Of a stretch of 64,000 nucleotides of DNA, positions 3,580 through 55,507 are shown one piece after another. Source of the stretch: Setoptus koraiensis. Lineage: Eukaryota > Animalia > Arthropoda. The DNA lies in NCBI GenBank assembly GCA_048013815.1, contig CM106586.1, positions 13,330,001 through 13,394,000 on the forward strand, read 5' to 3'. Within the stretch, counting starts at the first letter, position 1; each line of letters begins with the position of its first letter. The notes below the pieces were generated by a model that did not search any database, was not told where the DNA came from, and worked only from the letters and a program-made list of their open reading frames with translations. The position numbers and the translations under genes were made by a program.

Positions 3580-4230
3580 ATGGAGGACAAATTAGCCAAG
3601 TTTCGCGAATTGAAAAGACAGCGAGAAACAGCGAGTAAGTTGAATCACATTGAGGTGCTCGAGGAGCGAAGGAAGGCCCAATTGCCTGCAAATTGGGAAA
3701 AGAAACGCGAATGGACAGAGAAAAAAATCCAAGAAGAGGAAGAACGACTGAAAGCTGAGGAAAACGGCCAAGATTACGAAAGATTAAAGCTGCTCCAGGT
3801 GCAATCAGACGAAGCCGAGAGGTGGGATAGAAGAAAGGCAAGCAAAAAAAGGCCAGATCCTGGGTTCTCAGATTATGCTGCAGCCTCCATCAGGCAACAC
3901 GATCGTCTGGTTAAACAAATAAAGCCAGATCTCGAGGCATACGAAGAACTGAAGAAAAAGGTTGGCGAAGAACTGTTTTACGCTAAGGCAGACACTGTTG
4001 TTCATAATGTCATCAAGGATTCTCCAAAGGATATTGACAGAATGGTGGAGGATGTAAATAAGCAAATTGAAGTCAGGAGCAAGCATTCGCGTCGAAGGAA
4101 ATTTGACGATGACGCAGATGTAGACTACATCAATGAAAGAAATATGAGATTCAACAAGAAACTGGAACGCTTCTACAACAAATACACCGAGGAAATCAAG
4201 CAAAATCTCGAAAGAGGTACTGCCATATGA
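3580..4230 (+). CDS. SYF2: Pre-mRNA splicing factor SYF2, intronless, 216 aa
   Basis: ATG 3580 to TGA 4230. Family motifs PDPGFSDY, RRRKFDDDADVDYINERNMRFNKKLERFY and the C-terminal EIKQNLERGTA are present. AATAAA at 4242-4247. Confidence 0.97.
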   Translation: MEDKLAKFRELKRQRETASKLNHIEVLEERRKAQLPANWEKKREWTEKKIQEEEERLKAEENGQDYERLKLLQVQSDEAERWDRRKASKKRPDPGFSDYAAASIRQHDRLVKQIKPDLEAYEELKKKVGEELFYAKADTVVHNVIKDSPKDIDRMVEDVNKQIEVRSKHSRRRKFDDDADVDYINERNMRFNKKLERFYNKYTEEIKQNLERGTAI

Positions 4231-4686: not shown

Positions 4687-5131
4687 TGGTATTCATGCGA
4701 TCCAGTTTCATATCTTTAGTGAATTCTGAATAAAAATAGCCTCTATGCACTTGTATTTATGTACTCGGATTAGTCAGCGACATATAGATTGATATGAATG
4801 GTGTTACGCCCAAACAATGTGTTTATTCGTTCCTAAAGGCGTTCGAATATGCAACCAATATCTCAGTGGATTCACTATTGATAAGTTAAAACTAGCTGCA
4901 CCATTTCGAATGTGCGTGAGCCACTAGAAGAGACTAAATTTGCGTGAGACGATAAATTATTCATATCGGAATAAATGTTTAAGACAAATAACATCTATAT
5001 TTTCATCCAGATATTTCAATCATTCTAGAAGTCTCGTAGAAAATAGACCAGTGGACAGAATAGTTTGTTGTTGGCATTATCTTCTTGAACCTTACCAAAT
5101 CGTTTATCAGACAACAACAGAAAAGCACAAC

Positions 5132-7285
5132 ATGTCTGGTAGTGTTGTTATTTGCTACAAACTGATCGATAGCAACCCACTGGTCGACAAATTGTATTGG
5201 TCTTCTAACATGGACACATTCATCAGGCAGTATTATTTAGATTGCTTCGCTCAGTTAAGTGACCATCCAGTAGAGACTTTTTTTGACTTTGGTTTGCGTT
5301 TTGTAGGCGCCCAAAAAAATGATCCGAGCGAAAGCGACACAGGATCATTCGATTCAGCATGTAATCAGCAACAAGAAGACGTGAATATCGATAATCCTCA
5401 GATAGTCTCTAAAGAAAATCTCGAAGAGACTCATCTCAGATATAGATCTTATAGAGATGACAGATTATCGCCGACAAGGAGACACAAAGGAGATGGAATT
5501 ATAACGCTGAGAGCAAAAGACAAAAGACGCATACGCTATTTCAATATATTCTATCGTTTTATTGATCTTTGGACCCTGATGCATGAATTTCTGGGTATAA
5601 TAACCACCTCACCTTACAGCTATTATTCGGGTGGTCAATATGCTCTTGGCAAGGCAAGATCAGCACAAATGCTGATGACATTTTTGTTCTTCGGTAACTC
5701 TTATCTTGTTACAACAAAAATGAACAGAACAACCAGTCAGTTCGGCTACACAAATCATATAGAGCCATATGTCAGTCGTAGACAAGCGGCCATTGAGGGC
5801 AGAATAATCAATTTCGACATCAGTGGGCGAGCCTCGAAAATAAAATCACGAGTCTCATTTATTATCATATACTGTCCATTGATTTTAACTGCAGCCATGA
5901 TTTGGAGTCTTGTGTTTCAATTGGGCTTTTCTTCAGACACACCTGGCAAGGCGACAACTGGCGCAAGTTCGTCACTACACAACACCAGGCCTAAAGTAGT
6001 GACAAAAGAATCGACATTGATTTGGTTCGGGATCTATTCTATTTGGGCGGGTACTTCATTGGCACGTCTGTATTTATACGTTTATTATTTTTCAGTAATT
6101 TGTAGCACATTCACTGATGAATTCAAGAAACTCAACATAGATTTGACAAGATTGGCCTCGCACCTCGCTTTGGATCTATTCATCAACAACAATGATGGAG
6201 CAATGCCATTCATGTCTAATAACGATATTGTTGACAACGATGATATAAATAATCCATTGAATCATATAACGCCTCGATATAAAACTACCAGGACACGTGA
6301 AAGGCGCCCCAAAATAAACATCTCCGTCGATACAAATCTAGAGGCGTGTGTAAAGAAGAATCAAGGCAACAAAACTAATGGGTTTAAGAGGCCACACTTG
6401 AATGCATGCAGACCATTGATTGACTTGTATTTGCGTTACAATGAATTGTGCGAGCTCGTTCATAAATCAGACAAGTATTGGTCGGAAATATTCAAATATT
6501 ATTGGCTAGGTAGCTTGCTTTGTCTGAGTCTAACACTTTTCTTCTTGTGTTACGTCAAAGTGGAGTCAGTGGCTGCGTTTAATTTTATGTTTATCACATT
6601 CTGTTTGTTGTCGCTCATATATATAATATCCAATAGTTCTATCGAACTATCGCAACAAGTAAGTGACAAATATAGACAAATAACTGTAAACTGCGAGTGA
6701 TTGTGTCTAACACGAGACAAACAATAATTGTTACTGTTACTGTTGATCCCTCTCGATAGGTGTCCGCTCCAACCGATGTCCTCGAGTACATATTGATGAA
6801 TGTAAAGTTACCTAGCCAAGTGCATCATTATGTAAGTTTGATCAAGATTGTGAGTCATTAGTGCGCCTTCGAATTATCAAATATGTCAAAATTTATCAAT
6901 TGATCCATTGAACCCTTTAACATAATTGTCGTTGCTACTACTATCAGGTGAGGGATTTCTATGAAGAGAGTAAAGGAGATTACGTTGGATTTACAACGAA
7001 GGGTATCAGTGCTCAAGTTATGAATTTCAGAGGCATTGTTTGGGTATGTATTGTGTATTCGTGCTAACTACTGTTAATGAGTATCTACTGTGGTTCGTTA
7101 TTTATTGGACAATATCTCCAACAACATTTTCGATGATACACTAACCAATGCTCACCTCATCCACATACCAGATTTTCAATACCTTTATCACGACCTTTCT
7201 TGTTTATGCCGAGATCTTTCTCACTGTGGTCAAACGCCACAAGGTGTCCTTCACTCACTTGCACGCACAAGAAGACGAAGTGTGA
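5132..7285 (+). CDS. Gustatory-receptor family (7TM chemoreceptor), 4 exons: 5132-6658, 6760-6831 (or -6849), 6948-7043, 7172-7285; ~602 aa
   Basis: Long multi-TM first exon containing YNELCELVHKSDKYWSEIF. Three phase-0 GT-AG introns follow: GTAAGT 6659..GATAG 6759; GTAAGT 6832 or GTGAGT 6850..ATCAG 6947; GTATGT 7044..ACCAG 7171. Splicing gives an open frame ...ELSQQ|VSAPTDVLEYILMNVKLPSQVHHY|VRDFYEESKGDYVGFTTKGISAQVMNFRGIVW|IFNTFITTFLVYAEIFLTVVKRHK...*. C-terminal phase-0 introns and the VGFT motif are hallmarks of arthropod GRs. Confidence 0.8.
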
Positions 7286-11068: not shown

Positions 11069-13561
11069 TCATTGTGCGCTGACTCGCTGCTCAATTGGTC
11101 GTTTCGACAACGGTGGCGCCACCTTTGGCGGGCCTCTCCTGGTCTTGGGGCCGCTCGTTTGTGCCAGTGGCCTCTTTGGCGACGATGCGTTGTCGTCAGA
11201 CGATTTTAAGTTAATCACAAATGGGTCATAATTGTTGCCTCGATAATTGGCGGGCTGTTTTCGCGGGGGGCGATTGCCACCGCCGCCGCTGCCGCCGCCG
11301 CCATCCATCAGCAACAACTTGTTGCTTATCATTTGTCTCGAATTGAGTTCGAGCAATTTCGTGCAAGCATTAACCATCGCTCTGCTGGTTACATGCTGAA
11401 GGAAATTGTCAACAAACCGGCGCGTACTGGCAACACTCAGCGCATCTCTATTATCTCTGAGACTCTTGTAAGATCCGTTGAAATAACGGCAATAATCCAG
11501 GGCGTCATCTCTGTGCAACACAACACATTGTTTGGCCCTCGCCATGGCGGCCCCCTGTTTTCGCATTGAATAAGCACATTGATCTGTCTTGACAATTTGA
11601 AAATAGTCCATCACCACTCGCTTCAATACCTGTGCCTTCTCGTCTCTGCTGGCGTATTTTGTCAACATTAATTGCTTGACGTTTTTGTCGCTGACATATT
11701 CAAAAAAAGGATTTGATTTCGACGCCTCGACCATGTCTTTGGTGGTGGCACGAGCCCAATCGTTCCAAATCTTGCTCTGTTGTCTGTCTGTCTCGTCTTG
11801 TGGCGAGTCGCCTCTTTGAGTGCGTCGCAAACCGGATGGCCCCAGCTGCAGCTCTTTTTTGCTCGATACCCTGCCGGGATTGCCCGTCGATCTGGCGAGC
11901 CGACCCTCGTCGACGGGACTTCTGGATCGCGCCGGTTGTTGTACCGGCTGCTTGCCCGTCGAAGCCATCGGTTTGCCGTTTCCGCCGGCCACTCGCCGCC
12001 GATCTAGCTCGTTCTCGGCTCTGGGCCGGTTTCTCGGGGCACTCTCTTGTCTCGCCAGGAAATTGGTTGCCATTGGTGACACTTTCCTGGCCTCTTTTTC
12101 ACCGCCAGGCGGCCTGCTCGCGCCGAATCTCGCCTGATCTTGGCTGGTCGGGCTTTTGTTGTTGCTGTTGGTGGTTGGCGATTGATTGAGGCTGCAACTG
12201 GGCGCCGGAGAAATTGCCAGCTTCTTGCTGGACACAGAGCCCTCAGGAGAGGACAGCAATTTTCTATTGCCGGTAGGCTCTCTCTTTCTGTTTGCCTGAT
12301 AATCCTGATTGGGGTCACTTGCCGCCACTTTGCTCGCTGACCGATTCAACAATGGGCCCACTTGGCTACTTTGGCGAGCGAGCGGCCCAGTTGGCGAAGG
12401 CGTCCTATCGCCGCTCATCTCATCATCGCTCTCGAGCGATCTCTTGTAACGTCTGACAGGTTGTTGCTGCATATTGTTGCTGTTGTGAGCCAATCTGTTG
12501 TTGAACTGATTGCCCGTGTCTTGCTGCACGTAGGGATTGTTTTCCCTCGTGACGTAACCATTATAATTGGCCGCTTCCGGCGGCTCGTAATCGTTGAAAG
12601 CTTGTTGGTGGCGTTGATTTAGCGCTGGCGGGGCATCGTCCACGGGCATCTCATCGGCGTAACTGTCGCCCGTCGGGTGAGCGTACCGAGGCGCATTGTA
12701 GATCCGGTCAATTGGCGCTCTGTCGGCGTAACCGTTGCCCGTCGGGTAGCCACGCGGCGGAGGGTAGGCCTGCTGCGGCGGAGGGTAGGACTGCTGCTGC
12801 GGAGGGTAGGACTGCGGCGGCGCAGAAAGTTGCTGCTGGCCGTTGCCGTATTGAGCCGGATGTTGTTGTTGCTGTCGTTGTTGTTGTTGTTGCTGCTGGC
12901 GCTCGCGAAGTATTCGTCTGACCTCTAGCTCGACCATGAGATCCTCGTCGTCCACATCCTCGTAATTGTTGGCCGTAACGGGTCTCGGGATGGGGAGCGC
13001 TGCACGCGCCGCTTGCCGGTCATCGGCTACCGGTGCCGGGTTGGCGCGAAAGTTGTTTGGCGCCCTTGCGACAACATTGTGCTGGGCAGGAGTGGCGCCC
13101 CCGCTCGGCACCGAGGCCGGCGAGTTGTTGTTGAGCTCATACGGCGCGTTGCCGTTGCTGCGATTGTTGGCGTTGTTGTTGGCGTTGGTGGGGCCGTTGT
13201 TGTTGTTGTTGGTGGGGCTGTTGCTGTTGTTGTTGGTGGGGCCGTTGTTTGCGTTCCTCAGCAGTTTTGAGACCTCGTTCACCACTCTGTTCACTATCTG
13301 GTTTTCGTTGATGGCCGGACCGTTGCGCCTAACGGGAGCTCGCCTGTTCACCTGGCGACGGCCCCTGTTGACTCGCCCACGCTGAGAGTTGTTGCCACCA
13401 CCGCCGCCATTGCCACCGCCGCCGCCGCCCCCTCCGCCGCCGCCTCCGCCGCCGCCGCCACCGCCGCAACATGATACAAGAGCGGGCAATAGCAGCGACG
13501 CAATCACCAGGCAGGCTATCCATTTTAATTGTTTGCTCTTTGTAGTGGGTGTCCAATACAT
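11069..13561 (-). CDS. Orphan secreted precursor protein, intronless, 830 aa (signal peptide, poly-Gly, Asn-rich, Gln/Pro/Tyr repeats, RRYKR site, C-terminal 4-Cys helical region)
   Basis: 2.5-kb uninterrupted ORF. First ATG at 13561 gives MYWTPTTKSKQLKWIACLVIASLLLPALVSC, a hydrophobic signal-like segment. Putative polyA signal (TTTATT on the + strand) at 10848-10853. No family recognised. Confidence 0.8.
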   Translation of the reverse strand: MYWTPTTKSKQLKWIACLVIASLLLPALVSCCGGGGGGGGGGGGGGGGGGNGGGGGNNSQRGRVNRGRRQVNRRAPVRRNGPAINENQIVNRVVNEVSKLLRNANNGPTNNNSNSPTNNNNNGPTNANNNANNRSNGNAPYELNNNSPASVPSGGATPAQHNVVARAPNNFRANPAPVADDRQAARAALPIPRPVTANNYEDVDDEDLMVELEVRRILRERQQQQQQQRQQQQHPAQYGNGQQQLSAPPQSYPPQQQSYPPPQQAYPPPRGYPTGNGYADRAPIDRIYNAPRYAHPTGDSYADEMPVDDAPPALNQRHQQAFNDYEPPEAANYNGYVTRENNPYVQQDTGNQFNNRLAHNSNNMQQQPVRRYKRSLESDDEMSGDRTPSPTGPLARQSSQVGPLLNRSASKVAASDPNQDYQANRKREPTGNRKLLSSPEGSVSSKKLAISPAPSCSLNQSPTTNSNNKSPTSQDQARFGASRPPGGEKEARKVSPMATNFLARQESAPRNRPRAENELDRRRVAGGNGKPMASTGKQPVQQPARSRSPVDEGRLARSTGNPGRVSSKKELQLGPSGLRRTQRGDSPQDETDRQQSKIWNDWARATTKDMVEASKSNPFFEYVSDKNVKQLMLTKYASRDEKAQVLKRVVMDYFQIVKTDQCAYSMRKQGAAMARAKQCVVLHRDDALDYCRYFNGSYKSLRDNRDALSVASTRRFVDNFLQHVTSRAMVNACTKLLELNSRQMISNKLLLMDGGGGSGGGGNRPPRKQPANYRGNNYDPFVINLKSSDDNASSPKRPLAQTSGPKTRRGPPKVAPPLSKRPIEQRVSAQ

Positions 13562-14162
13562 GATTGGCAACAGGTTTTGCTGTTCAGGCTGGTGCCGCTT
13601 GGAAGTGCAACTTTATTATTTATTATGCTGCCGCTTGGCGGTGAACAGAAACACTGTCAATGGAATGGCTATCGCTGGTGCCAGTCGGATACAAATCAAT
13701 TGCACTCGGTCAACTAATTAATCCTTCTCCTTTCACACCTGATTACCATCTAATTATCTTATTTTCAATTATGCGCTGTGTTTGTGCGATTATAATGACG
13801 TATGCAAATTGCGCGCCGTTCGAAGCGCGTCTCAATTCCGAATTGACAATTCGAATGCTGTGCGATCTATTTAATGTAATTTTAATTCTAATAACGATCT
13901 CAATGAATGAATACGCCAATTCGCTAGTTGTAAGGCTAGCTGTAAATCCAATTGAATGCAATTTAGTTCAGTGGCCGCACAACCACTGGGTGCGTCATTT
14001 AAAACGTGTTGCGTAATCGCTCGCTGTGATTGTCAGTTTTTCTGTTGTTGTTCGTTGTTTCGGTCGTCGGTCGTTTGTGGACAACATCAACGACAGGTAC
14101 GGTTAGTGTGCGGATAGTTGCATGTGAGAGCAATGAGAGCGCCATTGCGACTTGCGCTTTTT

Positions 14163-17002: not shown

Positions 17003-19274
17003 CAATGCCCGACAGAGAGACCTATAAGCGCGCCAAGCTCACCCTATAAGCAGCTATGTGCGGTATATATGCGGTGCAGTATATATGTAGTTGCCAGTCG
17101 CTTAGCAGGCAGTTAAATAATACACTGTTGTAATAAAGGCGATAATTGAGAGCGACCCGATGCCGGCGACTCATTCCGATTGATATTAATGATCGGGCTG
17201 CCAGTCGGAATCGCTCGCAATCGGCCGACGAGCCAGCCAATTCACAGCGAATCGCATCGGCCGGCCAATGGCCACGGCAAATCGCTTGCGAATTGCGAAT
17301 CGGCTCGTCGAGCCGACACAAGCGACACGCAAACTGTATCGTCAAGATGGATGGATTACATGGAGAAGCGATTATAAGCACGCTGGTGGACGGATATTCT
17401 CAGTGAGCGTCATCTCGGTGAGCGTCATCTCAGCGAGCGTCAGCGGGATTAAATGGAGGCCAGCCAGTAGAGTCAATGGGCAGCCGCTGGCAGCGTCAAC
17501 TCGCCGGCGATTATCACCTCTTTTGAAATATTGTATACGGAGGCTCTCAGTAAATTTTTCTCTCTCGTCATCCCCTGCCGGGCACACACACAAACACTCA
17601 GGCAAACATGAGAACAAACATGAGCCGGCTACAAATCACGTTGCCCTTCTGTTTGTCCAACTAATAAGTGAACTTATTTTAATTACACTAACGAGCGCTT
17701 GGCGCCGCAACGAGATTATTTTGAAACATGTTGGCTCGTTTGTTGAGCATTCAAAGAATTTTAATTGTTGCGCAATTGCGTTATCAGCTCTCGGGTGTCG
17801 TTCGTCAATTGTCATCGTTCGCGCGCCGTCCCAAAGCCGCGCCCGTCCATCTATCAATTCTCAATTCTCAATTATCAAACCGACAAGAGTTGCGCAACAG
17901 CAACGACCTATGCAAAGTGCATGCCCAAATGTCATTATTTTTCGTCACAGCTGATGATGAGTCACGGCAGCGCCACTTTGCGGCGATAACTAATCAGTCA
18001 CATGACGCAATATCATTCATCTGGCATTTGTCAAATATGCCAGATGAACGAAATTGTGCTCAACACATTAAACACACACACACATTTCGATATATCTGGA
18101 AGAATCGTATCGTCAATTAATAGTAGACCTGTTTCATCTGCTTCACCGAATCGGCCGCATCATCGAGATGCCATCATCGAGATGCCGCCATCGAGATGCC
18201 GCCATCGAAACCGGATGCCGGCCGGCCACCAAAAGAGCCGGTTGTCAAACCGGTTTGTTGTATAGTAATAATGCCGACTGAATTGGCGCTCCGAATATGC
18301 GCACTATTGGTCAATTTCTTGACAAAACTTTTCGCTCGTAAACAAATGACCACCCGCAAGACAAGTGCAAAATTCAAATGTGTGTACACACGCAGAATGG
18401 GGTCGCTCGCATTTGCATACATATTATGTATTGCATAACTTGTGTAACATGAGCGATTGTGCGCAACTATCGCCGCCAGCGACCGCTAGGGGCGAAACAG
18501 CGGGCCCGAAATGAGACTGGCCGAATCGACGAAATATCACACAAAAAAGTCACAAAAAAGTCACAAAAAGTCAAAAAAAAGTCACAAAAAAGTCAAACAC
18601 AAAAATGTCACACCGAAATTGGGGACAGAGCTAGCGCGGACGTTGCCCCCTGATTCCGAACTGCTGGCCCGGCTCGCGATGATGCAACCCGGTGTGACAC
18701 CCGGTGCACAGGTGATCGGGTATTTCAAATACCGTATTTGGGTGTGATTAATTGGTGAGTTTTATTGGAAAAAAAAGAGCAAATCAAACTGTCAAGCGTG
18801 CGCTGTCATTTGTAAACCAATGCAACCGGCTTGCAAAATCTTGCGCATCAGAGAGGTATAGCGAGGTAGCGATAATGGTGGCGAGGCCCAAAATTGGGCG
18901 CGCTCACGATGCCAATTGATGGCGCGCAAGAGATAAGCGAGATCCCATCGGCAGATAGATTTCGGTTGTTGTTTTGATTGTTTCGGTGGAAAAGCAACAA
19001 GCGAGCGAAGAATTCGGATGGAAACAAAGCGTTATTTGCAACAACATTAGCAGCGAGTCTCACCACCCAATTTATTATATTTTCTGTGTATGTGTGTGTT
19101 GAACATAATAATGGGCCAATTTGCTCATTCAATCTGGAGCGAGCGAGCCGAGATTGAATTGCCGTGAATTGTTGACGATGGGCCAGACAGGTTAGCCGGG
19201 ATGAAGACGTTGGACAATGATGATTATTTAGGCAGTTTATCCGCGGGCAAGCTCCTGTTGTTTTGGCTGGCCGC

Positions 19275-19646
19275 TCGCATAGTTGTTGCCCTCTCTGGCT
19301 GTTGCTGCTGTTGTTGTTATGTAATTGTTGTGCGAAAAACAACAAGAATTAGATCATAATCTCGCCTTTGGTGATTATTGTGTGTGTGTGTGTGCGATTA
19401 TTACGTTACAACAACACAAGTGGCGGCTACCGATTAGCCGGAGCGCGAGCAGTCCGACGCAAGCGGCCAGCGAAATTCTTCGCCTGCCGGCTAATCTATC
19501 CAGTAGATCTGGTTATCTAATATTTAATCTAATTTCGGCTGCCAGCCAGCCAGCGAGCCAGTGAGCCGGCCGGCTCGGAATTCGCTCGGCAGCGCCATTT
19601 AATCTGGCTGCTGGCTCAAATTCATTGTCGGCCATGTTATTGTCGA
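19275..19646 (+). repeat. Donor copy of a dispersed inverted duplication (372 bp)
   Basis: Aligns end-to-end with the reverse complement of 24224-24708, with about 4 substitutions plus indels. Confidence 0.97.
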
Positions 19647-19866
19647 GTCCAGCGACCACCTTTAATCATGCCGGTCATCACTGCCGGCCGAGCCTGATTA
19701 TCACTAGCTCCGATCAGCGCACAGCCAGCGCGATCATGATGCAACAAGTGGCCGCTCGTCAGCTTGATACTATTAATTAGCTGTTAAAAACAAAACAACA
19801 TTCTATTAATTTATCTGAGCGTCGCGTCATTGTTCGGTCTGTCCGTGAGCGCACGAGCGCATGAGC

Positions 19867-19916
19867 CAGGTAGCACAGGTAGCGCTCAGGTAGCGCTCAG
19901 GTAGCACTCGGGTAGC
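19867..19916 (+). repeat. Tandem CAGGTAGC array (4 exact CAGGTAG plus one CGGGTAG)
   Basis: CAGGTAG at 19867, 19876, 19887 and 19898. Confidence 0.9.
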
Positions 19917-21730
19917 GTTTTAGAAATTTCAGGTGAGTTCGGCGAATTCTCGGCAAGTTCGGCAAGTTCGGCGAATTCGGCGGATTCTTGGCGAATTCTC
20001 CGGGCGCCGAGAATTCAAATGGCGAACGTCGCACCGCCGAGTTGTGTGCTCGTCATCGATGCCTTCTCAATTTGTTGTTGCTGCTGCTGTTGTCCGTTGC
20101 CCATTAACTGCTTATTAACTGTGCTGCTATATCCAGTAAAGTACTCATCGTGTAATTGTAACATCAGCAGTCGATTGGCCGGTCGTCCAGATAATCATCT
20201 CTTGCGTAACATGCTTCTGGCTACCGTAGTGTGGCCGTTGCGACACACACACACACACACACACAAGCAACAACAAGTTGTCTCAATTATCGCGCCAAAC
20301 AATCTAACTTTTTGCGAGTCTGGCCGCACTAATCACCGTTCAGTGTGACCGTTGGTGGCCCACTCATCAGCCAGCAACCTCTAATTGGGGGCCGTTCGAG
20401 TCACCTGTGTGGCCTCTCATGTCTCGAGTGGCTGTGCTGTCTTTGCTTCCATCGGGCTCACCTGTCGCGCTCTGTCGGCCGCTCGACAAACAATGACCAA
20501 TGGCCAGGCGGTTGTGCCAACAAATTTTGTTGAACAAAATGCCGGCTGAACAAAATTGTGAGCAAGTTGCTCGCTGCTCGAATTAGTTATTTTTTATCAC
20601 TATTATTGCGAGCTATCACTGTTATTATTGCAACAAGCGGCTCGTCATTAGTAGCTGCTGCAATGGGCACAGTCAGTGCGCGAATGTTGATCATTAGATA
20701 ATAATAATCATAACAAATAGAATAATAAGTAATTGATTACTGTTGCGCGCTATTCATTGAATAGCTGCATTAATCAAGCGAGCCGCTTAATTGTGGCACA
20801 AGTCTCATCTCACAATCTTGTCAGACGGCGAGACAGCATCATTATTGCGTAATAGTCTTGGTTGCATGAATGCTGTCTCGACAAGTTTGTTTGTTTGTTA
20901 ACAAGAGAATCGCCGAGCAACGATTAATAGAGAGCAACAGACAGACAGAGAGAGTCAAATTAAATATAAATTAAATTGCGGCTCGCGCCGAGTCGCGCGC
21001 CACCTTCAACTCTCGTCATGATCAAGTTTATTTCCATCATTAATACATATCATTATCTCATGCTGCTACACAGGCTGCTCATGCATGTAGGCATGTTTAT
21101 TATTACGTAACAACATCACTGTTATTATTACTATTATTATTGTTATTGTTATTGTTGTTATTATTATTGTTGTTGTTGTTGCTGTTGGTGTTGCTGTTGC
21201 GCATCACTATGTTGCTAGCTATGCGTTTGTTAGCAGCCGAGTAATAGAAGCCGGTAATTATATCCTTGTCCGATTGGCCAACTCACCTGTTGGCCGCATC
21301 TTAAAGTGCAATGTGCAAATCAGTGCAACATATCCAAAATCCAAAGAGCAACATGTCGTAAAAGCGTCATAAGTCCAGTCGGCGGCGGCCGCGGCCAATT
21401 CAATTAGACTGCACAGAGCTGGCTGTTTGATTAATTCAATTAGACAAATCTTTCAATTGCGTTGTTGTGGCCATCGGTTGGGCCGCGGATCGGTCCGATG
21501 ACCAACATCCTGTCACTGGAATGTCCATCTCTTGGCCACACGATTCTTCGTCTGTTTGTCTTGCGCCGGGGCAAACATAATTAGCGCAGCAGTGCCTTGT
21601 TGTCCATCATTTGCGCCTCGCATCCCGAATTGGCCAACGAACGGCCGGAATGGCCGAGTGGCCGGGCCAATGGTCATTTCAATTTTAATTTTAACATTGG
21701 CCAGCCAATAAATATCGCATTAGCACCTGC

Positions 21731-21813
21731 AGTGCGACTCGCATCAGTGCGACTCGCATCAGTGCGACTCGCATCAGTGCGACTCGCATCAGGGCGACTC
21801 GCATCAGGGCGAC
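21731..21813. repeat. Tandem 15-mer (AG(T/G)GCGACTCGCATC) x ~5.5
   Basis: Read directly from the sequence. Confidence 0.9.
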
Positions 21814-21920: not shown

Positions 21921-24201
21921 ATAACATGTAATAGCTGGTGGCATGCAAGCTGATATTTCGTATAATAACAATAATGAATTCAAATATTTAAATTCATGCT
22001 CCGGTGAAAATTGCCAACGCATGCCGGCCTCACAGGCTCTCGCTCGCGTATCGCACACTGTGGGCGCGCCAAGCGACTAACCCGGCGACTAATTGCCATG
22101 ACTTGCGCCGGCCTATTATGTAACAATATGCAGCTTATTATGTAACAATATGCCAGTATTAATATTCATAATATGCGCGCCGCGCCGCGCAGAGTGATCT
22201 AGTTACCTGTGCGCCGGCTCATCGTGTGCGCTATTGAACGGCGTTGTTGTTGCCGCTGTTGTTGCCGCTGTCGTTGTTGCCGCTGTCGTTGTTGGCGCTG
22301 TTGTTGTTGGCGCTGTTGCTGTTGTTGTTGCGGTCGTTGTTGCTGTTGGGGCTGGCCGGCATCGGACAGTGTGAGAGATGTTGCAAATTGAATTAGCGTC
22401 GCTCACTCATCCACTCAGCTGTGCCATTCACCTGTTCTAGTCAGCTGAGTCAGGCGGCGTTGTGAGTGTTGGGTAAATTGTTTGCTGTTACGCTCAATTT
22501 GTTGTAAAAAATGCCGCTCGCTTGCTGCACACGAACTGCATCATCATCATCATCATATCACTGCATCGCACACAATCGCTCGTCCGCCGACTATTGCGTC
22601 ATGCAATGCACACTCAACAGCAACAACAGCAACATTGCATAAACACATTACATTATTATTAAATACGCACACACACAGGTGAATCCATCTACGAGGTGTA
22701 GTGACGCAACAGGCCTGTCTCCTGTCGCCAGTTGCCTGCCGCTGTTATGACTGCAGACGCATAACAAACTATTATTCAGCATCGCATTTTATCCGCTGGC
22801 TGCTCTATTTGAATCATTTATCAGCCAGAGACGGTCTCACCTTTCCGGTGCTCGGCTGGCATTCGAGCCAGCAAAACTTCTCTGATGGCCGACGATTTCT
22901 CGCTTGTGCCCGCGACCACGACGGGCCACGAAGGTGCCAACAGGTGGCAACATGCACTTGTTAAATTTGCTCCGTCGTCGTTGTTGTTGTTTCTGTTGCG
23001 CTGTTGTTTATGATCGGGACGACGTTTACAACAGCGACAGCAACAACAACAGCGGCAACAACAGCAGCGGCAACAACGGCACCAGCAACAACAACAACAG
23101 CGCCGAGAGCCGCTGCTCTACAAGACAAATTATTAATTGATTTCATTCATCATCGTTCATCGGCAATGTGCACCTCGGGCCACTCACCACACGACTGGCA
23201 TTTTTCACTTTGCTTGCGCTCGCCTCGCAACTCTTGTCAGTCAGACCAAACTGTGCTCCTGTCGGCATGAGCACCACTGCACCATTGCACCATCGCGTCA
23301 TTGCACCACGGCACCAATGCGGCGGCGCATGGCCAGTTACGTAAGGTGCAATGAAATACGTCGCGTATAGTGATAGTAGCGGGCGATGAGTGAGCGACGA
23401 CAACAACAACGACAACAACGACAGCAACAACAACAACAACAACGCCAGCAACAACGACAACAGCAGCATCGCGGCACAACGAATGCAAATCGCTCGATTG
23501 TAACTGTAACAAATGGCGCTCGCAAACATTGTGAGTCACAATTTGTGACGCTGAACGGGCCAAACAATAGCGGCCTATATCGAACAGGATGTTGCTCAAT
23601 GTCAAGCTCTATAGGGTTGAGACAGGGGCAAAAACACTTGTCGAAAGAACGTTCTCTGGCGGGTTGTTTCTCTTTCGTTTCTGGTTATAGGCGAATAAAG
23701 AAATCTGTGAGCGGCACGATCAACAAGTGACCGTGATAACGCTTCAGTCACGACTTTATAAATGCTAATGTCTCAATTAGCTATCCGGCAATCAGTTGGC
23801 TGGCTCGCCAGCGAACAGCGACCCCGGCCGAGCCGGCGAAGCTTTCGGACCGAGTCAGCCAACGAGCCATTGTAGCTGCGTCGTGAGCTGTTGTGATGGC
23901 ACCCAATTGTAAGCGAAATTTCGCGTTTTGAAGTGAGCATCGGCCAGCCGATTTGTTTGCAGAGTTGTTTGTATGCGTTATTACAAACAAATGATGGTGC
24001 TCATTGAGAATCAATTGGCGAGGTGTGACGAGGTGTCACCTGTGTTCAACTGTGACAAATTGTACAAAATCCTCTGGCTAGACTGTTCTGGCAAGACCGC
24101 TTTGGCGAGACTGGCCAGCATTGGAGGGGACATTCGTGCGGTGGCCGTCAGACTGCACTGCTGTCGTGGCTGATCGCAGCTTGTCCACTTGGCCATCAAT
24201 T

Positions 24202-24226
24202 TGCGATCAATCGGTTTCGTTTGTCG
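24202..24226 (+). repeat. Left 25-bp direct repeat (target-site duplication) TGCGATCAATCGGTTTCGTTTGTCG
   Basis: Identical to 24704-24728. Confidence 0.95.
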
Positions 24227-24555
24227 ACAATAACATGGCCGACAATGAATTCGGGGCCAGCAGCCGGCAGCCAGATCAAATGGCGCTGCCGAGCGAATTC
24301 CGAGCCGGCCGGCTCACTGGCTCACTGGCTCGCTGGCTCACTGGCTCGCTGGCTCACTGGCTCGCTGGCTCACTGGCTCGCTGGCTCGCTGGCTCACTGG
24401 CTCACTGGCTCGCTGGCTGGCTGGCAGCCGAAATTAGATTAAATATTAGATAACCAGATCTACTGGATAGATTAGCCGGCCGCTTGCGTCGGACTGCTGA
24501 CTGCTCGCGCTCCGGCTAATCGGTAGCCGCCACTTGTGTTGTTGTAACGTAATAA

Positions 24556-24606
<51 letters not shown>

Positions 24607-24708
24607 AATCACCAAAGGCGAGATTATGATCTAATTCTTGTTGTTTTTCGCACAACAATTACATAACAACAACAGCAGCAACAGCCAGAAAGGGCAACAA
24701 CTATGCGA
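24224..24708 (-). repeat. Inserted inverted copy (485 bp) of 19275-19646
   Basis: Reverse complement of the donor with expanded (TG)n and 8-mer repeats, flanked by exact 25-bp direct repeats. Confidence 0.97.
24559..24604. repeat. (CA)23 microsatellite
   Basis: Read directly; lies inside the inserted inverted copy. Confidence 0.9.
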
Positions 24709-24728
24709 TCAATCGGTTTCGTTTGTCG
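24704..24728 (+). repeat. Right 25-bp direct repeat (target-site duplication) TGCGATCAATCGGTTTCGTTTGTCG
   Basis: Identical to 24202-24226. Confidence 0.95.
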
Positions 24729-33924: not shown

Positions 33925-34554
33925 CAGGTGAACGGCTAAGCGGATTAATAGCTCATCGTCATTGTTTGGGTCGTCTGTTTGGCTAGCATTGGCTGGCTGG
34001 ATTAGCCCTGGCGGGCGCTAAGTTTGCGAATTGCTGTTTTATAATAATAGCCATGGCTCCACCTTTTGATTGAGCTTAGCCACAACTACCTGTTGGCCAT
34101 GTTTGTTTGTCTTGCCAGCCCATCCAAGGTCCAGCGGTTGTTTGGTTTGCGTTGTTGCGCAACCAGCACTTTACAATTGTATTAAGCAAATATTGACTAT
34201 TCACCGACAGACTGGCCGCCATTGAGCACGGCAGCAATTGGATCACACGAAGCAGCAATTGTTGTTGTGGTCGTTGTTGTTGTTGTTGTTGTTGTGTCGG
34301 AAGCAACAACAGTTATCAGCAGCAGCAGCAGCAGTCTATTTTATATTCACGCAGAGAGATTGTCGCACAAATATTCACACACACAAATATTCACACACAA
34401 AACAAAGTGTTACAATCAGCAACGATTAAATAACAAACATACAAATATCGCCACCGGAACAGGAGCGAGTCAACACACGAATTGCATAACACTGACATTG
34501 AATCAACACAACAATATATCGCAACAACAATTAAAACATACAACAAAACACAAA

Positions 34555-35007
34555 ATGGACGCCGTAGAACAGCGCCCCCTTCTAGATCAGCTGGGCAGTT
34601 TGTTTGATGAGCAAACGTTCATTAGTGATCTACTGTTAGACGAGGTCAACAATCATACGTCATGTAACGACCAGCACGACCACATGAGCCACGTTGTTAC
34701 AAGCTGCTGCTCACCTGTCACAAGTGCCTACTGTGACGACGACGATGTCGATCAAATGTTGGCCGGCCTAATGAGCGTTCACGATTCTCACCACCTAAAC
34801 CACATTCACAGTAGTATTCACCATAGTCATCATCATCACAATCATAATCATCATCATCATAGTCATCATCATGCCGATCTTAATCTCAATCTTAACAGAG
34901 TGGGCGAGCATGACGCAACAGCAACGGCAGAAGATGACCTCTATGAGGAGCTGAGGTTCTTGAAGGAGCCCGAAGACGACGAGTCCATGACGAGGGGCTC
35001 GCCACCG

Positions 35008-35038
<31 letters not shown>

Positions 35039-35244
35039 TCGTCACATCGTCCACCGGCACGGGCTATCATGACGATGCCACATATCCGATTATGCAATCA
35101 AACAGTCACTCAGCAATCAACAGTGTCAACACGACCGCCATTGACGGCCAGCACGAGGACACAAACACAAATCTGGTCTCACAAACACAACTGTCGCCAC
35201 ACTTGCACCACCACCACCAACAACAACAGCAACAGCAACAACAG

Positions 35245-35282
<38 letters not shown>

Positions 35283-36105
35283 ACAGCAACAACAAATCGA
35301 GCTCGAAAACGCTCTAGATAGTGAGTCGCCAGCAAGTAAGGTCAAAATACCAGCTTTAGATAGGTACAATTTGCGCGAAAAGTCGATAAAGAGTCGCATC
35401 GAGTGCGAACGCAAAAAGAGGCGCACAAGTGTGATTATAGCAACGGCGGACAGCAACACAACAACCAACAGCAACCATAAGTCACCGCTGCTGCTGACCA
35501 GCAACAACATCAAATTGCCGGGCCAGCAAACAACGGCCAGTGCAATGGAGGCGAGCGAAGACAATAGCGAAAACCAGACCAACACCAGACAGCGCCACAA
35601 ACAGGTGAAACAGCCCGCCAACAAGAAACAAAAGCTTCAACAGAGCTCAAACAACGCTGATGTAACAACAACAACAACAGCAACAACCACAACAACTACA
35701 AGCAAAAGCAAGGCGCCACCGTTGAGCAAATATAGGCGAAGAACGGCCAACGCCAGAGAAAGAAACCGAATGCAAGAACTCAATCAGGCCTTCGAATTGT
35801 TGCGCAAGGTTGTGCCGCACACACTCATAGAGTCGCTGGCAACAGGTAGCTGTGCCAGCGTCACCAGCGACGGGGGCCTCAGCTGCGGCGGAAGTAGCTG
35901 CGGCGACGGCGAGAACAAACTAACAAAAATAAATACTCTCAAATTGGCCAAAACCTATATTGAGGCGCTGAGCGAGGTGCTGAACGAGGACGACAGACAG
36001 CGGGGCAAACGGGAACAGCAGCAAGCCGGCTCGCCCGATGGCCAGCAGCGGTCGGGCCTTGCAGCGAGGGTGTGTCCACACCACGGGCCGGTCACCACCA
36101 CCACC

Positions 36106-36141
<36 letters not shown>

Positions 36142-38373
36142 AACAAAAACAAATCATCAATGAATGGCGCAACGCATAAATTATCAGTAACAGATAGCAA
36201 CGACCACCGTGATAACAGCAGCGACAAGCAATCAATTAAACTAACTAGCAATCAAGGGGCCAGCACGGGTAATACAAGACTTGAGCCGGCGTCATCGTCG
36301 TCGGATGGCCGCCAGGTGAAGTCATCAGGAGCAGCTCACAACCATGATAATAATCTCATAGAAACAGATACTCAACAGCGGCGGCGGCAGCAGCAACAAC
36401 GGCAACAACAGCAGCAACAAACTAAACAAAATGATCAAATGGTGATTAACAACAACAGCAACAACAACAACAACAATCAAATCAATCAATCAGCGGAGGT
36501 GCGCCACCACCTAACAGACGCCAACTGCGTCGTGATGCAATCGATGCGCCAACACGACGGGCCAACATATCAAAGCGAGCGAGAGCAACAACAAATCAGA
36601 GCGGCCGATGACGCAATAGCGACCGTGATGCAAAGTCGTCATGATCAATTGAGCGACTCGCCAACAATGTCCTCACCTGGTGGCGTGTCCATAGCAACGG
36701 CGATTAGTCAGCAGCTGCGACAGCAGCAGATTTCGCACAGCGGCAACAGCAGTTTGGCCATAGTTCCGGTCAATGAGAGCATGCCAACGGCAGCATCATC
36801 GCCGCAAACAATAACCGCGCCAACCACGGTGGCCAATCAACTGCAACTGCAGCAGTCAATCGGTTGCGCCAATAATAACAGCGGCAACAACAGCAATTGT
36901 CAGCGAGAAAACGCCAGCCAGCAAATAAACAACAGCAACGAGAATCAATCAACAGGTAATCAATCAATGATGCTGATGATGCAACAGCAGCAGCAACAGC
37001 AGCAGCAGCAGCAATCCATCTTGTTAACATCTAATCAGCATGCGATAATTGGTTGCATCAATCAAGAACAAGTGAAACAAATGCAACAGGTGAACAATCA
37101 GCAGCAGCAGCAGCAAACGATTCTAGTCACAAGAAACCAACAGCAGCAACAGCAACAGCCCCAGACCATTGCAGTGGCCATCTTGGGTTGCATTCCAGCC
37201 TCAATGTTTCAAACTGCTGCTGCTGCTGCTGCCACTAACCAGCAGCAACAGCAGCAAACAATTAATAGTCAATCATCAATTACAATTGATGGCAACAATT
37301 TGATTGGCGCAAAATTAGTGCAATTAGCGAGCGGCCAGCAACAGCAACAACTGACCAGCGCAACAATCAACAACGGCCACACAATTAACATCAGCAACAA
37401 TTCAAGTCAAACAATATATCAGCTGCAACAGCACACCAATCACCTAGATTTTGCCACTGGCCAAAGGCAAACAACTTGTCAACAACAACAACAGCAACAA
37501 CAACAGCAACAACAACAACAACAACAACAACCAACAACAACTAACAACAACAACACGCAATGCAACGGTGCCCAAGCAATGCAACTAATTAACGCTAACG
37601 GACAATTTAATCATTTCACCATAATGAGGCCAGCACAATTGATACAATTGCAGCAGCAGCATCAGCAGCCCCGAACAACCACTTGTAACAACATATCAGC
37701 AACTATTATAGGTCGGCAGCAGGTGAGCAGCGGTTTGCCTGCGACAACTATCACCACTGCACCAACAACAACAGCAACAACAACAACTAACAACGCCAAC
37801 AACTGCGCCATGTTGCACAACAACCAACTACTGCTGCTGCAACAGCAACTGCCCGATAACAATCTCGCCAGGCCACCTACAACAACCATGTGCATCAACA
37901 TTGACCAACAGCAGCAACAACAACTGCTCTTACAATCAAATCAACTGCAGCAACATCAACAACAACAGCAGCAACAACAACAACAATTTCAAGTGCACCA
38001 GCAGCACTTGTTTGCGTCAATGGGCAAGCAACAACAACAGCAACAACAACAGGAGCACCAATTGGACGTACGCCAACTGCTAACCAAGTTCAGCAATCAA
38101 CTTGTTGCAAAGCGCTCGTTGCACAATCATCACAACGGGCCCGCTAATCAAGGCCACCAGCCTGTGCAAAAGAAAACGTATCGTTTCCATAACTACGACG
38201 ACATTCCCGACATCCAGGCCATCAATCAATCGACGGCCCTGGCGGCCACTATGTCAATTAACCAGCAACAGCGCAACCACCATAACAACAACAATTGTTC
38301 CAGTAATAGGCCCTCGTCGCGCGCCTCTAGCGGTCACACAAGCTGCTCTGTGTCGCCCGCGCAAACTCTCTAA
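34555..38373 (+). CDS. dei: Delilah/taxi-family group-A bHLH transcription factor (atonal superfamily), ~1272 aa, extremely Q/N/H/T-rich
   Basis: [36 protein letters not shown]...[18 protein letters not shown] (about 35710-35982) matches the Delilah signature [16 protein letters not shown]...KLTKITTLRLA, with the long loop typical of the family. First ATG 34555, TAA 38373. AATAAA at 39078 and 39086. Confidence 0.87.
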
Positions 38374-50968: not shown

Positions 50969-51100
50969 TCGCAGCGTCGCTATATCGCAACGTCGCTATG
51001 TCGCAACGTCGCTATGTCGCAACGTCGCTATATCGCAACGTCGCTATGTCGCAACGTCGCTATATCGCAACGTCGCTATGTCGCAACGTCGCTATATCGC
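50969..51100. repeat. Tandem 16-mer (TCGCAACGTCGCTAT(G/A)) x 8
   Basis: Read directly from the sequence. Confidence 0.9.
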
Positions 51101-54406: not shown

Positions 54407-55507
54407 ACAGGCTGGCGCGCCCGCGCTCAAAACTTTATTGAGTTGATAATTAGGCCAGCTCAATGGGCCATTCCACTCCAATCCACTCGAGACAAATCTA
54501 CGCTTCGCTTGTGCCCCAATCTTTTGCCTCAAAAAGAGATTGGCGACTCGCGCGCCGAGCGGCGCACCCGCCAGAGGGCCGCCACTTAATTGCCGCTCGG
54601 CGCCCATTGTTTGCACACCAGCCAGTGGGCCAGTGAGCCAGCCAGCGGGCCAGCGAGCCAGCGAGCCAGCGGGCCAGCGGGCCAGTGAGCCAGTGAGCCA
54701 GTGGGGCCCGTCATCGGCTTGACTCCGCGCGCGAAACGCTCGACGGGACATTGTTTATCGGGCGGCTGGCAGTTTGTTTATTAGTTGTTTGCTTTTGAGC
54801 ATTTGCCAGCGGTTGCAGCCGATTTAATTTTGCGATTGTGAGCCGCCGATTCTTTAATAGTTTTTCTGCACAGCCAGCCCAACTGTGCACAATTGAGCAA
54901 TTGTTGGCCTGGCCTGCGGGTGCCCGGTCGCTCTCGTGCGCCGGCCCGCAGCGGCCCAAGCGAGCGCGCTAAATACCATGGCGCGACAAGGGCACTCTCA
55001 AAACCAATAAATAACTTATTGCTCTATTTGTGTACCGCGGACCCGCGGTCTGGCGGCCAAAAAGGGCGACGCAACCGGCGCTGCCCAAAGCGACACTCGT
55101 CTGTCTGTGCGGGCCATTTTCTTGGCCGCCATTCGATGCGCCAGTCGATGCTCGCCCGTTCGCTTGGGGCCCGGCGCCGTGCTGAGCGAGCCGATAATTA
55201 TCAGGTAATTATTGCGGCAAAATGCATGGGCAATCGTTTGTTTATCGGCTCGCCTCTACAACATTATTGTGGCGCCGTAGCTCGTGCCGATGCATTGCAT
55301 GTATGGCATATGTGGCATGTATAATGCGCATCGGTATGAGTGGTCGATCGATCGCTCCTAGCGACTGGCGCCCTCTATGCTATATCCATCCAAGACGCCC
55401 CCACTAGCTCATAAAACAATTGATATTTATGCACTGCGCCACCGGTGGCGTGTGAGTGTGTGTGTGTGTGTTTATAAATTGTAACGGGATAGCAGCCCAG
55501 CCCCGTT

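What the first reader, a model, noticed from the sequence alone, without database searches (positions are those of the whole stretch)
24202..24728. Templated inverted insertion of a segment from 5 kb away, flanked by an exact 25-bp target-site duplication with junction microhomologies
Seen: 24227-24703 is the reverse complement of 19275-19646, bounded by identical 25-mers (24202-24226 and 24704-24728). Both junctions share bases with the donor: TCG on the left and TGCGA on the right. There are no TIRs, no poly(A) tail and no ORF. Established: long TSDs plus microhomology plus a nearby template are signatures of template switching (FoSTeS/MMBIR) or polymerase-theta-type templated repair at staggered breaks, not of DNA transposition or classical retroposition. 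Inference: a transposon-independent copy-paste of cis-regulatory DNA inside a developmental gene's upstream landscape, i.e. a route to shadow enhancers.
Basis: partly seen in the sequence, partly recalled or inferred. Interest (0 to 1): 0.8.

Follow-up and report, generated by a model that had tools for sequence, protein, structure and literature searches.

The report
Copy-paste repair scar in mite DNA
A roughly 480-base stretch of non-coding DNA in a gall-mite genome was copied backwards from 4.6 kb away and pasted in while 25 bases of the landing site were duplicated; this is a clean but ordinary scar of error-prone DNA break repair or replication, not a jumping gene, and nothing shows that it acts as a gene switch.

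Summary
Window 24227-24703 is an inverted copy of 19275-19646, with 4 substitutions in 352 alignable positions and five repeat-type indels. It is bounded by an exact 25-mer at 24202-24226 and 24704-24728 that occurs nowhere else in the 48.7 Mb held. Homology with the donor runs 3 nt (TCG) and 5 nt (TGCGA) into the two 25-mers.

Only these two copies exist on the two chromosomes, and the donor's flanks are single copy. I found no terminal inverted repeats, tail, tRNA-like part, RNA family or protein domain. The best reading is therefore a one-off, DNA-templated, microhomology-primed insertion. It arose either by Pol-theta-type end joining at a break with ~25-nt 3' overhangs, or by an MMBIR/FoSTeS template switch that returned 25 nt behind its departure point. 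The sequence cannot separate these two.

The genome is very probably Setoptus koraiensis (Eriophyoidea). Pol theta is present, and I could not detect Ku, XRCC4 or a third DNA ligase.

This scan has already noted the same scar type at six or more other places in this genome. I could not test reads, an empty-site allele or a genome-wide count. Known kind, low interest.

The parts
24202..24226 (+). Left copy of the duplicated 25-nt landing site. Its last 3 nt (TCG) are also present at the donor edge (left microhomology).
24227..24703 (+). Inserted inverted copy of the donor (477 nt). Homology including the microhomologies spans 24224-24708.
24704..24728 (+). Right copy of the duplicated 25-nt landing site. 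Its first 5 nt (TGCGA) are also present at the donor edge (right microhomology).
19275..19646 (-). Donor (template) segment, 372 nt. It has no flanking direct repeat and lies in single-copy surroundings.
24311..24425 (+). GGCTCRCT 8-mer array, 14.4 units in the insert against about 3 in the donor (+88 nt).
24559..24604 (+). (CA)23 run in the insert, 30 nt (15 CA units) longer than the donor's run.
24252..24277 (+). Cluster of 3 of the 4 substitutions plus 8 extra nt near the left end of the insert. No third template for it exists in the window.
34222..38373 (+). Context only: a 1383-codon ORF with a class II (NeuroD/Twist/TAL1-like) bHLH domain, about 9.5 kb downstream of the insert.

Best explanation
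This is a single, fairly recent DNA-templated copy-paste event made by error-prone break repair or replication restart, not by a mobile element.

Inferred course: a free 3' end at the target, ending ...GTCG-3' on the top strand, paired through TCG with the opposite strand 4.6 kb upstream. It was extended for about 370 nt across the donor, probably with slippage in the repeats. Its new 3' end ...TGCGA-3' then paired with the complementary TCGCA on the other side of the lesion, 25 nt behind the point of departure. Fill-in left the 25-mer on both sides of the insert.

Two lesions give the same product. One is a two-ended break with ~25-nt 3' overhangs repaired by Pol-theta-mediated end joining, with hand-over to a more processive polymerase. 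The other is a collapsed or stalled fork followed by an MMBIR/FoSTeS template switch. I rate them about equal.

Shown: the anatomy, the copy number, the absence of mobile-element hallmarks, and the presence of a Pol theta gene. Inferred: the order of events, the enzymes, and that the repeat-length changes arose during copying.

The copy has no demonstrated function.
For: Exact 25-mer pair, unique in 48.7 Mb. The inverted copy is 98.9% identical over 352 positions. Microhomologies of 3 and 5 nt sit exactly at the inner ends of the 25-mers, which is where the priming 3' ends would be; joint chance is about 1.5e-5.

Only two copies exist, and the donor flanks 18300-20700 are single copy. No TIRs or notable hairpins, no tail, no tRNA or Rfam match, no Pfam domain.

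The donor is only 4.6 kb away. A donor chosen at random in 48.7 Mb would fall within 5 kb about 2 times in 10,000.

A Pol theta gene with helicase and polymerase parts is present. Ku, Ku_N and XRCC4 were not detected, and only two ATP-ligase domains were found.

Literature:
- The MMBIR model states that a return behind the collapse point gives a duplication, and it allows inverted templates (PMC2621351).
- Breaks with 46-nt 3' overhangs give tandem duplications; in Ku- or Lig4-deficient cells these carry microhomology and sometimes in-cis templated inserts (PMC5730883).
- In the mite Tetranychus urticae, end joining is mainly Pol-theta-driven and produces templated insertions. LigIV was not found in Eriophyoidea, and Pol theta is conserved across Acari (PMC13571142).

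Similar scars are noted elsewhere in this genome (unchecked AI notes).
Against: An insert of about 370-480 nt is much longer than typical Pol-theta templated inserts, which are tens of nt.

No reads, no empty-site allele and no outgroup were available. The polarity of the repeat-length changes and the reality of the junctions therefore rest on a single consensus assembly of more than 100,000 pooled mites, built from PacBio CLR reads with Flye and short-read polishing (PMC11920263).

About 2.9 Mb of unplaced scaffolds were not searched for further copies.

The junction geometry is equally compatible with an RNA template.
Confidence: 0.8

Rival explanations
1. Retroposition: a local, non-polyadenylated transcript of the donor region was reverse-transcribed at a staggered nick pair by LINE machinery (target-primed reverse transcription), which leaves variable target-site duplications.
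For: A 25-nt duplication is within the range LINE machinery produces (general knowledge). Microhomology at both junctions also fits TPRT. The genome holds at least 56 RVT_1 matches, many in long open frames, and 5 APE-type endonuclease matches. The paper reports 1.29% LINEs.
Against: No A-rich or simple-repeat tail at either end, and no polyadenylation signal near either end. The donor is only 4.6 kb away, which random retroposition would give about 2 times in 10,000. There is no evidence that the donor is transcribed. Other scars noted in this genome have 0.7-1.6-kb flanking duplications that TPRT does not make (unchecked notes).
Confidence: 0.06
2. An unrecognised low-copy non-autonomous transposable element, of which 19275-19646 and 24227-24703 are two copies.
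For: It has a flanking direct repeat like a target-site duplication. About 5% of the genome is unclassified repeat. The unplaced scaffolds were not searched.
Against: Only two copies exist in 48.7 Mb, and the second has no flanking repeat. No TIRs, hairpins, tail, tRNA-like part or coding capacity. A 25-nt duplication fits no cut-and-paste superfamily. The apparent ends coincide with microhomology to the target, which is not expected of element termini.
Confidence: 0.04
3. Assembly or pooling artefact: the insertion is a chimeric or minority structure fixed in the consensus by Flye and polishing of CLR reads from a pool of wild mites.
For: The assembly is a consensus of more than 100,000 individuals with 1.13% heterozygosity, built from CLR reads and polished with short reads. 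Repeat lengths in such assemblies are unreliable.
Against: The two copies differ by substitutions and indels, so this is not a collapsed or duplicated read pile. Assemblers do not generate an exact 25-nt duplication of the landing site with microhomology at both joints. Missed-adapter CLR chimeras give immediate fold-backs, not a 480-nt piece taken from 4.6 kb away. Coverage was about 496x.
Confidence: 0.05
4. Capture by ligation: a free DNA fragment excised or broken out of the donor region, or of a sister copy, was ligated into a staggered break after fill-in, without templated synthesis.
For: It would give the same gross structure of insert plus duplicated overhang.
Against: The donor is still in place. 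Both joints show microhomology (3 and 5 nt, joint chance about 1.5e-5), which points to annealing-primed synthesis and not blunt ligation. The classical ligation pathway (Ku, XRCC4, LigIV) is not detectable here.
Confidence: 0.04

Closest known systems
Tandem duplications with in-cis templated inserts formed by Pol-theta-mediated end joining at breaks with long 3' overhangs (paired-nickase experiments in mouse ES cells, PMC5730883)
   Same: The stretch between two staggered nicks is duplicated. There is microhomology at the joints, and an extra insert is sometimes copied from nearby DNA. The outcome is favoured when Ku or Lig4 is missing, which matches the apparent lack of these genes here.
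   Different: Experimental inserts are short (tens of nt) and come from within a few hundred bp. Here about 370-480 nt were copied from 4.6 kb away. The initiating lesion is unknown.
MMBIR / FoSTeS template switching (PMC2621351)
   Same: Priming is by microhomology. Templates can be in either orientation and nearby. Early synthesis has low processivity. A return behind the departure point duplicates the flank.
   Different: It is described mainly for kb-to-Mb human copy-number variants with several switches. Here there is a single small switch with a 25-nt flank, and there is no evidence on replication.
Pol-theta-driven end joining with templated insertions in the spider mite Tetranychus urticae (PMC13571142)
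   Same: Same mite superorder (Acariformes). End joining there depends on Pol theta and not on LigIV. Junction microhomologies are 1-4 nt, and templated insertions were seen.
   Different: Those are small Cas9-induced germline events in another mite. No long inserts with duplicated landing sites were reported in the passages I read.
LINE-mediated retrocopies and SINEs
   Same: Variable-length target-site duplication and possible junction microhomology.
   Different: No tail, no internal promoter or tRNA-like part, two copies only, and the donor is adjacent.
Gene movement by filler-DNA patching of double-strand breaks in grass genomes
   Same: Natural copy-and-paste of unlinked or nearby DNA into a break, with short junction homologies and sometimes duplicated flanks.
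   Different: Plants, not an arthropod. These are usually direct or unlinked copies.

Membership tests
Microhomology-primed templated insertion (TMEJ / MMBIR class) | The insert has an identifiable template elsewhere in the same genome, and that template is retained | tested here: met
   The donor 19275-19646 is still present and is 98.9% identical over 352 nt.
Microhomology-primed templated insertion (TMEJ / MMBIR class) | Short identity between the target ends and the template edges at both junctions | tested here: met
   TCG (3 nt) and TGCGA (5 nt); joint chance about 1.5e-5.
Microhomology-primed templated insertion (TMEJ / MMBIR class) | Target shows a deletion or duplication of variable size, not a fixed-length duplication | tested here: inconclusive
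   This event has a 25-nt duplication. Variability (43 nt, 49 nt, 0.7-1.6 kb) rests on unchecked earlier notes only.
Microhomology-primed templated insertion (TMEJ / MMBIR class) | Dependence on Pol theta, or on Pol delta/Pol32 for MMBIR | not testable with these tools
   Only the presence of the gene is shown: a POLQ helicase ORF plus a DNA_pol_A ORF at C1:19.99 Mb.
Cut-and-paste DNA transposon / MITE | Terminal inverted repeats | tested here: not met
   No inverted repeat pairs the two ends of the insert.
Cut-and-paste DNA transposon / MITE | Short target-site duplication of a length fixed for the superfamily (2-10 bp), and multiple copies | tested here: not met
   The duplication is 25 nt. 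There are two copies in 48.7 Mb, and one has no duplication.
Non-LTR retroposed copy / SINE | A-rich or simple-repeat 3' tail next to one flanking repeat | tested here: not met
   The ends read ...CAACTATGCGA and, on the other strand...CCATGTTATTGTCGA.
Non-LTR retroposed copy / SINE | Internal Pol III promoter or tRNA/7SL/5S-like head, and many copies | tested here: not met
   ARAGORN found 0 genes, no Rfam family came near its threshold, and there are two copies only.
Non-LTR retroposed copy / SINE | Variable-length target-site duplication, and LINE machinery in the genome | tested here: met
   25 nt is within the LINE range. RT and APE-endonuclease matches are present.
Helitron | No target duplication, 5'-TC...CTRR-3' ends with a 3' hairpin, insertion between A and T | tested here: not met
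   A 25-nt duplication is present. The 3' end is TGCGA, with no hairpin beyond chance.
Shadow enhancer | Two separate regulatory modules with overlapping activity on the same gene | not testable with these tools
   No expression, chromatin, binding or conservation data. Only the position upstream of a bHLH ORF is known.

The most novel reading that the evidence does not exclude
Eriophyoid mites such as this one have lost the whole classical end-joining core (Ku70/80, XRCC4, LigIV) while keeping Pol theta and Rad51. As a result, microhomology-primed copy-paste with duplicated landing sites (25 nt to more than 1 kb) has become a main way their streamlined genomes gain and move sequence. This locus would be one small, clean, non-coding example of that process.
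Probability: 0.3. Interest if true: 0.6.

Novelty: new member of a known kind. Interest (0 to 1): 0.25.

Why it matters
On its own the event matters little. It is a tidy natural example of a scar type already explained by Pol-theta end joining and MMBIR models, and no function has been shown for it.

Its value is as a data point. The junctions are unusually legible: an exact 25-nt flank, 3- and 5-nt microhomologies placed exactly where the priming 3' ends would be, and a retained donor 4.6 kb away. The lineage is one where published work points to Pol-theta-dominated repair and loss of LigIV. A genome-wide catalogue of such events, together with a confirmed loss of Ku, XRCC4 and LigIV, would make a long-discussed link testable in an animal: the link between loss of classical end joining, genome streamlining and insertion-type mutation.

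Tried and rejected
My planned 1.8-Mb scan for other local duplicates with flanking repeats was not done, and I could not read the other events named in earlier notes.
- An exact search for the 25-mer in public metagenome contigs found nothing.
- The word-based protein search with the bHLH region gave only 45-56% identical unnamed hits. NCBIfam gave nothing. The Atlas search stayed below 0.9, so the bHLH subfamily is unresolved.
- Rfam, ARAGORN and Pfam on overlapping ORFs were all negative.
- Folding of both junctions and both donor edges as single strands gave z-scores between -1.1 and +0.8, so no hairpin signal.
- A search for a third template for the 24252-24277 patch found none in the window. 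The clustering of 3 of the 4 substitutions there has P of about 0.025, which is suggestive only.
- The idea that all repeat expansions lie in the derived copy is not significant. Four changes make the insert longer and one makes the donor longer, and there is no outgroup to give polarity.
- The bacterial promoter/terminator scan is meaningless for a mite and was ignored.
- A self-comparison of the whole window found no other dispersed duplicate.

Full report
OBSERVATION

The window sequence shows the 25-mer TGCGATCAATCGGTTTCGTTTGTCG at 24202-24226 and again at 24704-24728. A pattern search of the whole genome held (48,755,295 bases, two contigs), allowing up to three mismatches, finds only these two sites. 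In the window it is the only exact direct repeat of 20 nt or more, outside simple repeats and tandem arrays, with partners within 3 kb.

Between the two 25-mers lies an inverted copy of 19275-19646. A global alignment gives 352 alignable positions with 4 substitutions, or 1.1%. It also gives five length differences. Relative to the donor the insert has:
- +8 nt at about 24254-24261;
- +88 nt in a GGCTCRCT array (14.4 units against about 3);
- -20 nt (AGGCGAAGAATTTCGCTGGC, flanked by GGC on both sides in the donor);
- +7 nt (a tandem GACTGCT);
- +30 nt in a CA run.

Homology runs from 24224 to 24708. The last three bases of the left 25-mer (TCG) and the first five of the right one (TGCGA) are thus shared with the donor edges, and donor and target flanks are unrelated beyond them. 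With a per-base match probability of 0.25, the chance of 3 + 5 matching junction bases is about 1.5e-5.

WHAT IT IS NOT

BLAST of 24202-24728 against the genome finds only the donor for the unique parts. The other 40-odd hits cover only the 8-mer array or the CA run. A 2.4-kb query around the donor (18300-20700) is single copy apart from the insert. A self-comparison of the 64-kb window finds no other dispersed duplicate.

No inverted repeat joins the two ends of the insert. The junctions and donor edges fold no better than shuffles. There is no A-rich or other tail at either end, no tRNA-like part, no Rfam family near its threshold, and no Pfam domain in the short low-complexity ORFs that overlap donor or insert.

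The donor copy has no flanking direct repeat, so the copy at 24.2 kb is the derived one. These results fail the defining features of cut-and-paste transposons, Helitrons and SINEs.

ORGANISM AND ASSEMBLY

The two contigs are 24,221,962 and 24,533,333 bases. The published chromosome-level assembly of the eriophyoid mite Setoptus koraiensis has two chromosomes and an N50 of 24.53 Mb (PMC11920263). An earlier, unchecked note of this scan had also called the genome a gall mite. I take the genome to be S. koraiensis on the match of sizes.

Three points from that paper matter here:
- The assembly is a Flye consensus of PacBio CLR reads (about 496x) from more than 100,000 pooled wild mites. It was polished with short reads, and heterozygosity is 1.13%.
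- 5.8% of the assembly (about 2.9 Mb, 563 scaffolds) is unplaced and is not in the genome I could search.
- Repeats make up 13.8% of the genome, including 1.29% LINEs.

Three consequences follow. Repeat lengths are uncertain. "Two copies only" applies to the two chromosomes. The 1.1% divergence between the copies is about the same as allelic diversity, so the event is young and may be polymorphic.

MECHANISM

The microhomologies sit exactly where the priming 3' ends would be. A top-strand end ...GTCG-3' can pair through TCG with the donor's opposite strand. Copying then yields ...CAACTATGCGA-3', whose last five bases pair with TCGCA-3', the end of the bottom strand on the other side. Fill-in then leaves the 25-mer on both flanks.

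Two lesions give this product. The first is a two-ended break with about 25-nt 3' overhangs. The second is a stalled or collapsed fork whose nascent strand switches template and returns 25 nt behind its departure point.

The MMBIR paper says outright that a return in front of or behind the collapse point gives a deletion or a duplication, that templates can be used in inverted orientation, and that early synthesis has low processivity (PMC2621351). In mouse ES cells, nickase-made breaks with 46-nt 3' overhangs give tandem duplications. [quoted passage not shown]

The dominance of slippage-type differences (five indels to four substitutions) fits error-prone copying, as does the cluster of three substitutions plus 8 extra bases within 26 nt near the left end (P of about 0.025). 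No third template for that patch exists in the window. Without an outgroup, however, the polarity of the changes is unknown, and later microsatellite mutation or assembly error could explain the length differences.

LINEAGE CONTEXT

The genome has a Pol theta gene: a 903-codon ORF with DEAD, Helicase_C and POLQ_helical domains is followed 350 nt later, on the same strand, by a 745-codon ORF with DNA_pol_A at E = 1e-95. Rad51 is found at E = 3e-128.

By the same six-frame method I found no Ku core (PF02735), no Ku_N (PF03731) and no XRCC4 (PF06632). I found only two ATP-dependent ligase domains, one strong and one marginal. Caveats apply: the tool's control genomes are prokaryotes, so there is no eukaryotic positive control. 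The unplaced scaffolds are missing, and fast-evolving genes can escape detection.

Published work agrees in part. In Tetranychus urticae, end joining in the female germline depends on Pol theta, loss of LigIV has no detectable effect, and junctions show 1-4-nt microhomology and templated insertions. In the same study LigIV could not be identified in Eriophyoidea, while Pol theta is conserved across Acari (PMC13571142). T. urticae does have Ku70 and Ku80, so their apparent absence here would be a further loss. Loss of classical end joining has been linked to compact genomes and to insertion-rich evolution in Oikopleura and in several parasites (PMC6635534).

RIVALS

Retroposition by LINE machinery would give the same junction geometry, and the genome has reverse transcriptases and a few APE-type endonucleases. 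But there is no tail and no polyadenylation signal. The donor is also only 4.6 kb away, where a random donor would be that close about 2 times in 10,000.

An unknown low-copy transposon is not excluded by the unsearched 2.9 Mb, but every hallmark tested is missing.

An assembly artefact is unlikely. The copies differ from each other, and an assembler does not create an exact duplicated landing site with microhomology. I could not test this with reads.

Capture of a free fragment by ligation is disfavoured by the microhomologies and by the retained donor.

THE BIOLOGICAL CLAIM

Donor and insert both lie in a roughly 20-kb gap. On one side is an 833-codon ORF on the minus strand (11069-13570). 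On the other is a 1383-codon ORF on the plus strand (34222-38373), whose residues 505-583 form a bHLH domain (Pfam E = 3e-14). That domain is closest to NeuroD1, Twist1 and TAL1 among solved structures and has an unusually long loop. Its subfamily is unresolved.

So "upstream of a probable developmental regulator" is fair. That the copied segment is regulatory, or that the copy acts as a shadow enhancer, is untested and cannot be tested with these tools.

EARLIER FINDINGS OF THIS SCAN

The same stretch was noted once more (s1-330921). Other notes, some followed up by other agents, describe the same kind of scar elsewhere in this genome:
- an inverted neighbouring-gene fragment between 43-bp direct repeats (s1-338176);
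- a patchwork of copied gene pieces with 49-bp repeats (s1-352479);
- an inverted Ras-like gene piece in ING3 (s1-342997);
- whole-gene copies with 0.7-1.6 kb of duplicated landing site (s1-325870, s1-318748, s1-352477).

They are leads, not evidence. If they hold, flank lengths from 25 nt to 1.6 kb favour template switching with a variable return point over staggered nicks for the class as a whole.

NOT DONE

No reads, no empty-site allele and no sister genome were available. My own genome-wide scan could not be run.

VERDICT

This is a real feature and a clean example of a known scar of microhomology-primed templated repair. The regulatory part is unsupported. Novelty: new member of a known kind. 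Interest: 0.25.

Noticed in passing
whole genome G000 (C1 and C2): The classical end-joining core is not detectable by six-frame Pfam search: Ku (PF02735), Ku_N (PF03731) and XRCC4 (PF06632) give no match. Only two ATP-ligase domains are found (C2:5490517-5491125, strong; C2:6826905-6827117, marginal). Rad51 and a two-ORF Pol theta gene (C1:19991017-19996319) are found easily by the same method. There is no eukaryotic positive control, and the unplaced scaffolds were not searched.
   Followed up: partly
window 24311-24425, and at least 40 other places in G000 (for example C1:9221951-9222068 and C2:13384620-13384703, which is window 54620-54703): Arrays of the 8-mer GGCTCACT/GGCTCGCT recur across both chromosomes at 72-92% identity to the array in the insert. 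This looks like a common minisatellite motif of this genome.
   Followed up: no
window 22243-22353 against 23028-23103 and 23393-23471: Between donor and insert lie GTTGTTGCCGCT-type arrays facing CAACAACGACAG-type arrays. They form imperfect inverted repeats of 55-79 nt at 70-82% complementarity. They might stall replication, but I found no link to the event.
   Followed up: no
window 21730-21813: A near-perfect 15-mer tandem array (CAGTGCGACTCGCAT, 5.6 copies, 98% matches) in the same intergenic gap.
   Followed up: no
window 50975-51081: A tandem array of 16-nt period (CGTCGCTATRTCGCAA-like) that gives many exact 20-mers repeated 64-80 nt apart.
   Followed up: no
window 11069-13570 (-) and 4940-6700 (+): Long ORFs of 833 and 586 codons with no Pfam or NCBIfam match. 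The first was already noted by the scan as an orphan secreted-protein candidate (s1-330868). SYF2 splicing factor lies at 3580-4230 (+).
   Followed up: no
window 35692-36021 (+): The bHLH domain of the 1383-codon ORF has a loop of about 30 residues rich in Ser, Gly and Cys between helix 1 and helix 2, much longer than in NeuroD1 or Twist.
   Followed up: no
G000 C2:0.27-1.05 Mb and C1:3.06-3.27 Mb: Most reverse-transcriptase and APE-endonuclease matches cluster in these two regions. One match lies in a 4778-codon open frame (C2:931802-934186). This suggests retroelement-rich islands on otherwise repeat-poor chromosomes.
   Followed up: no
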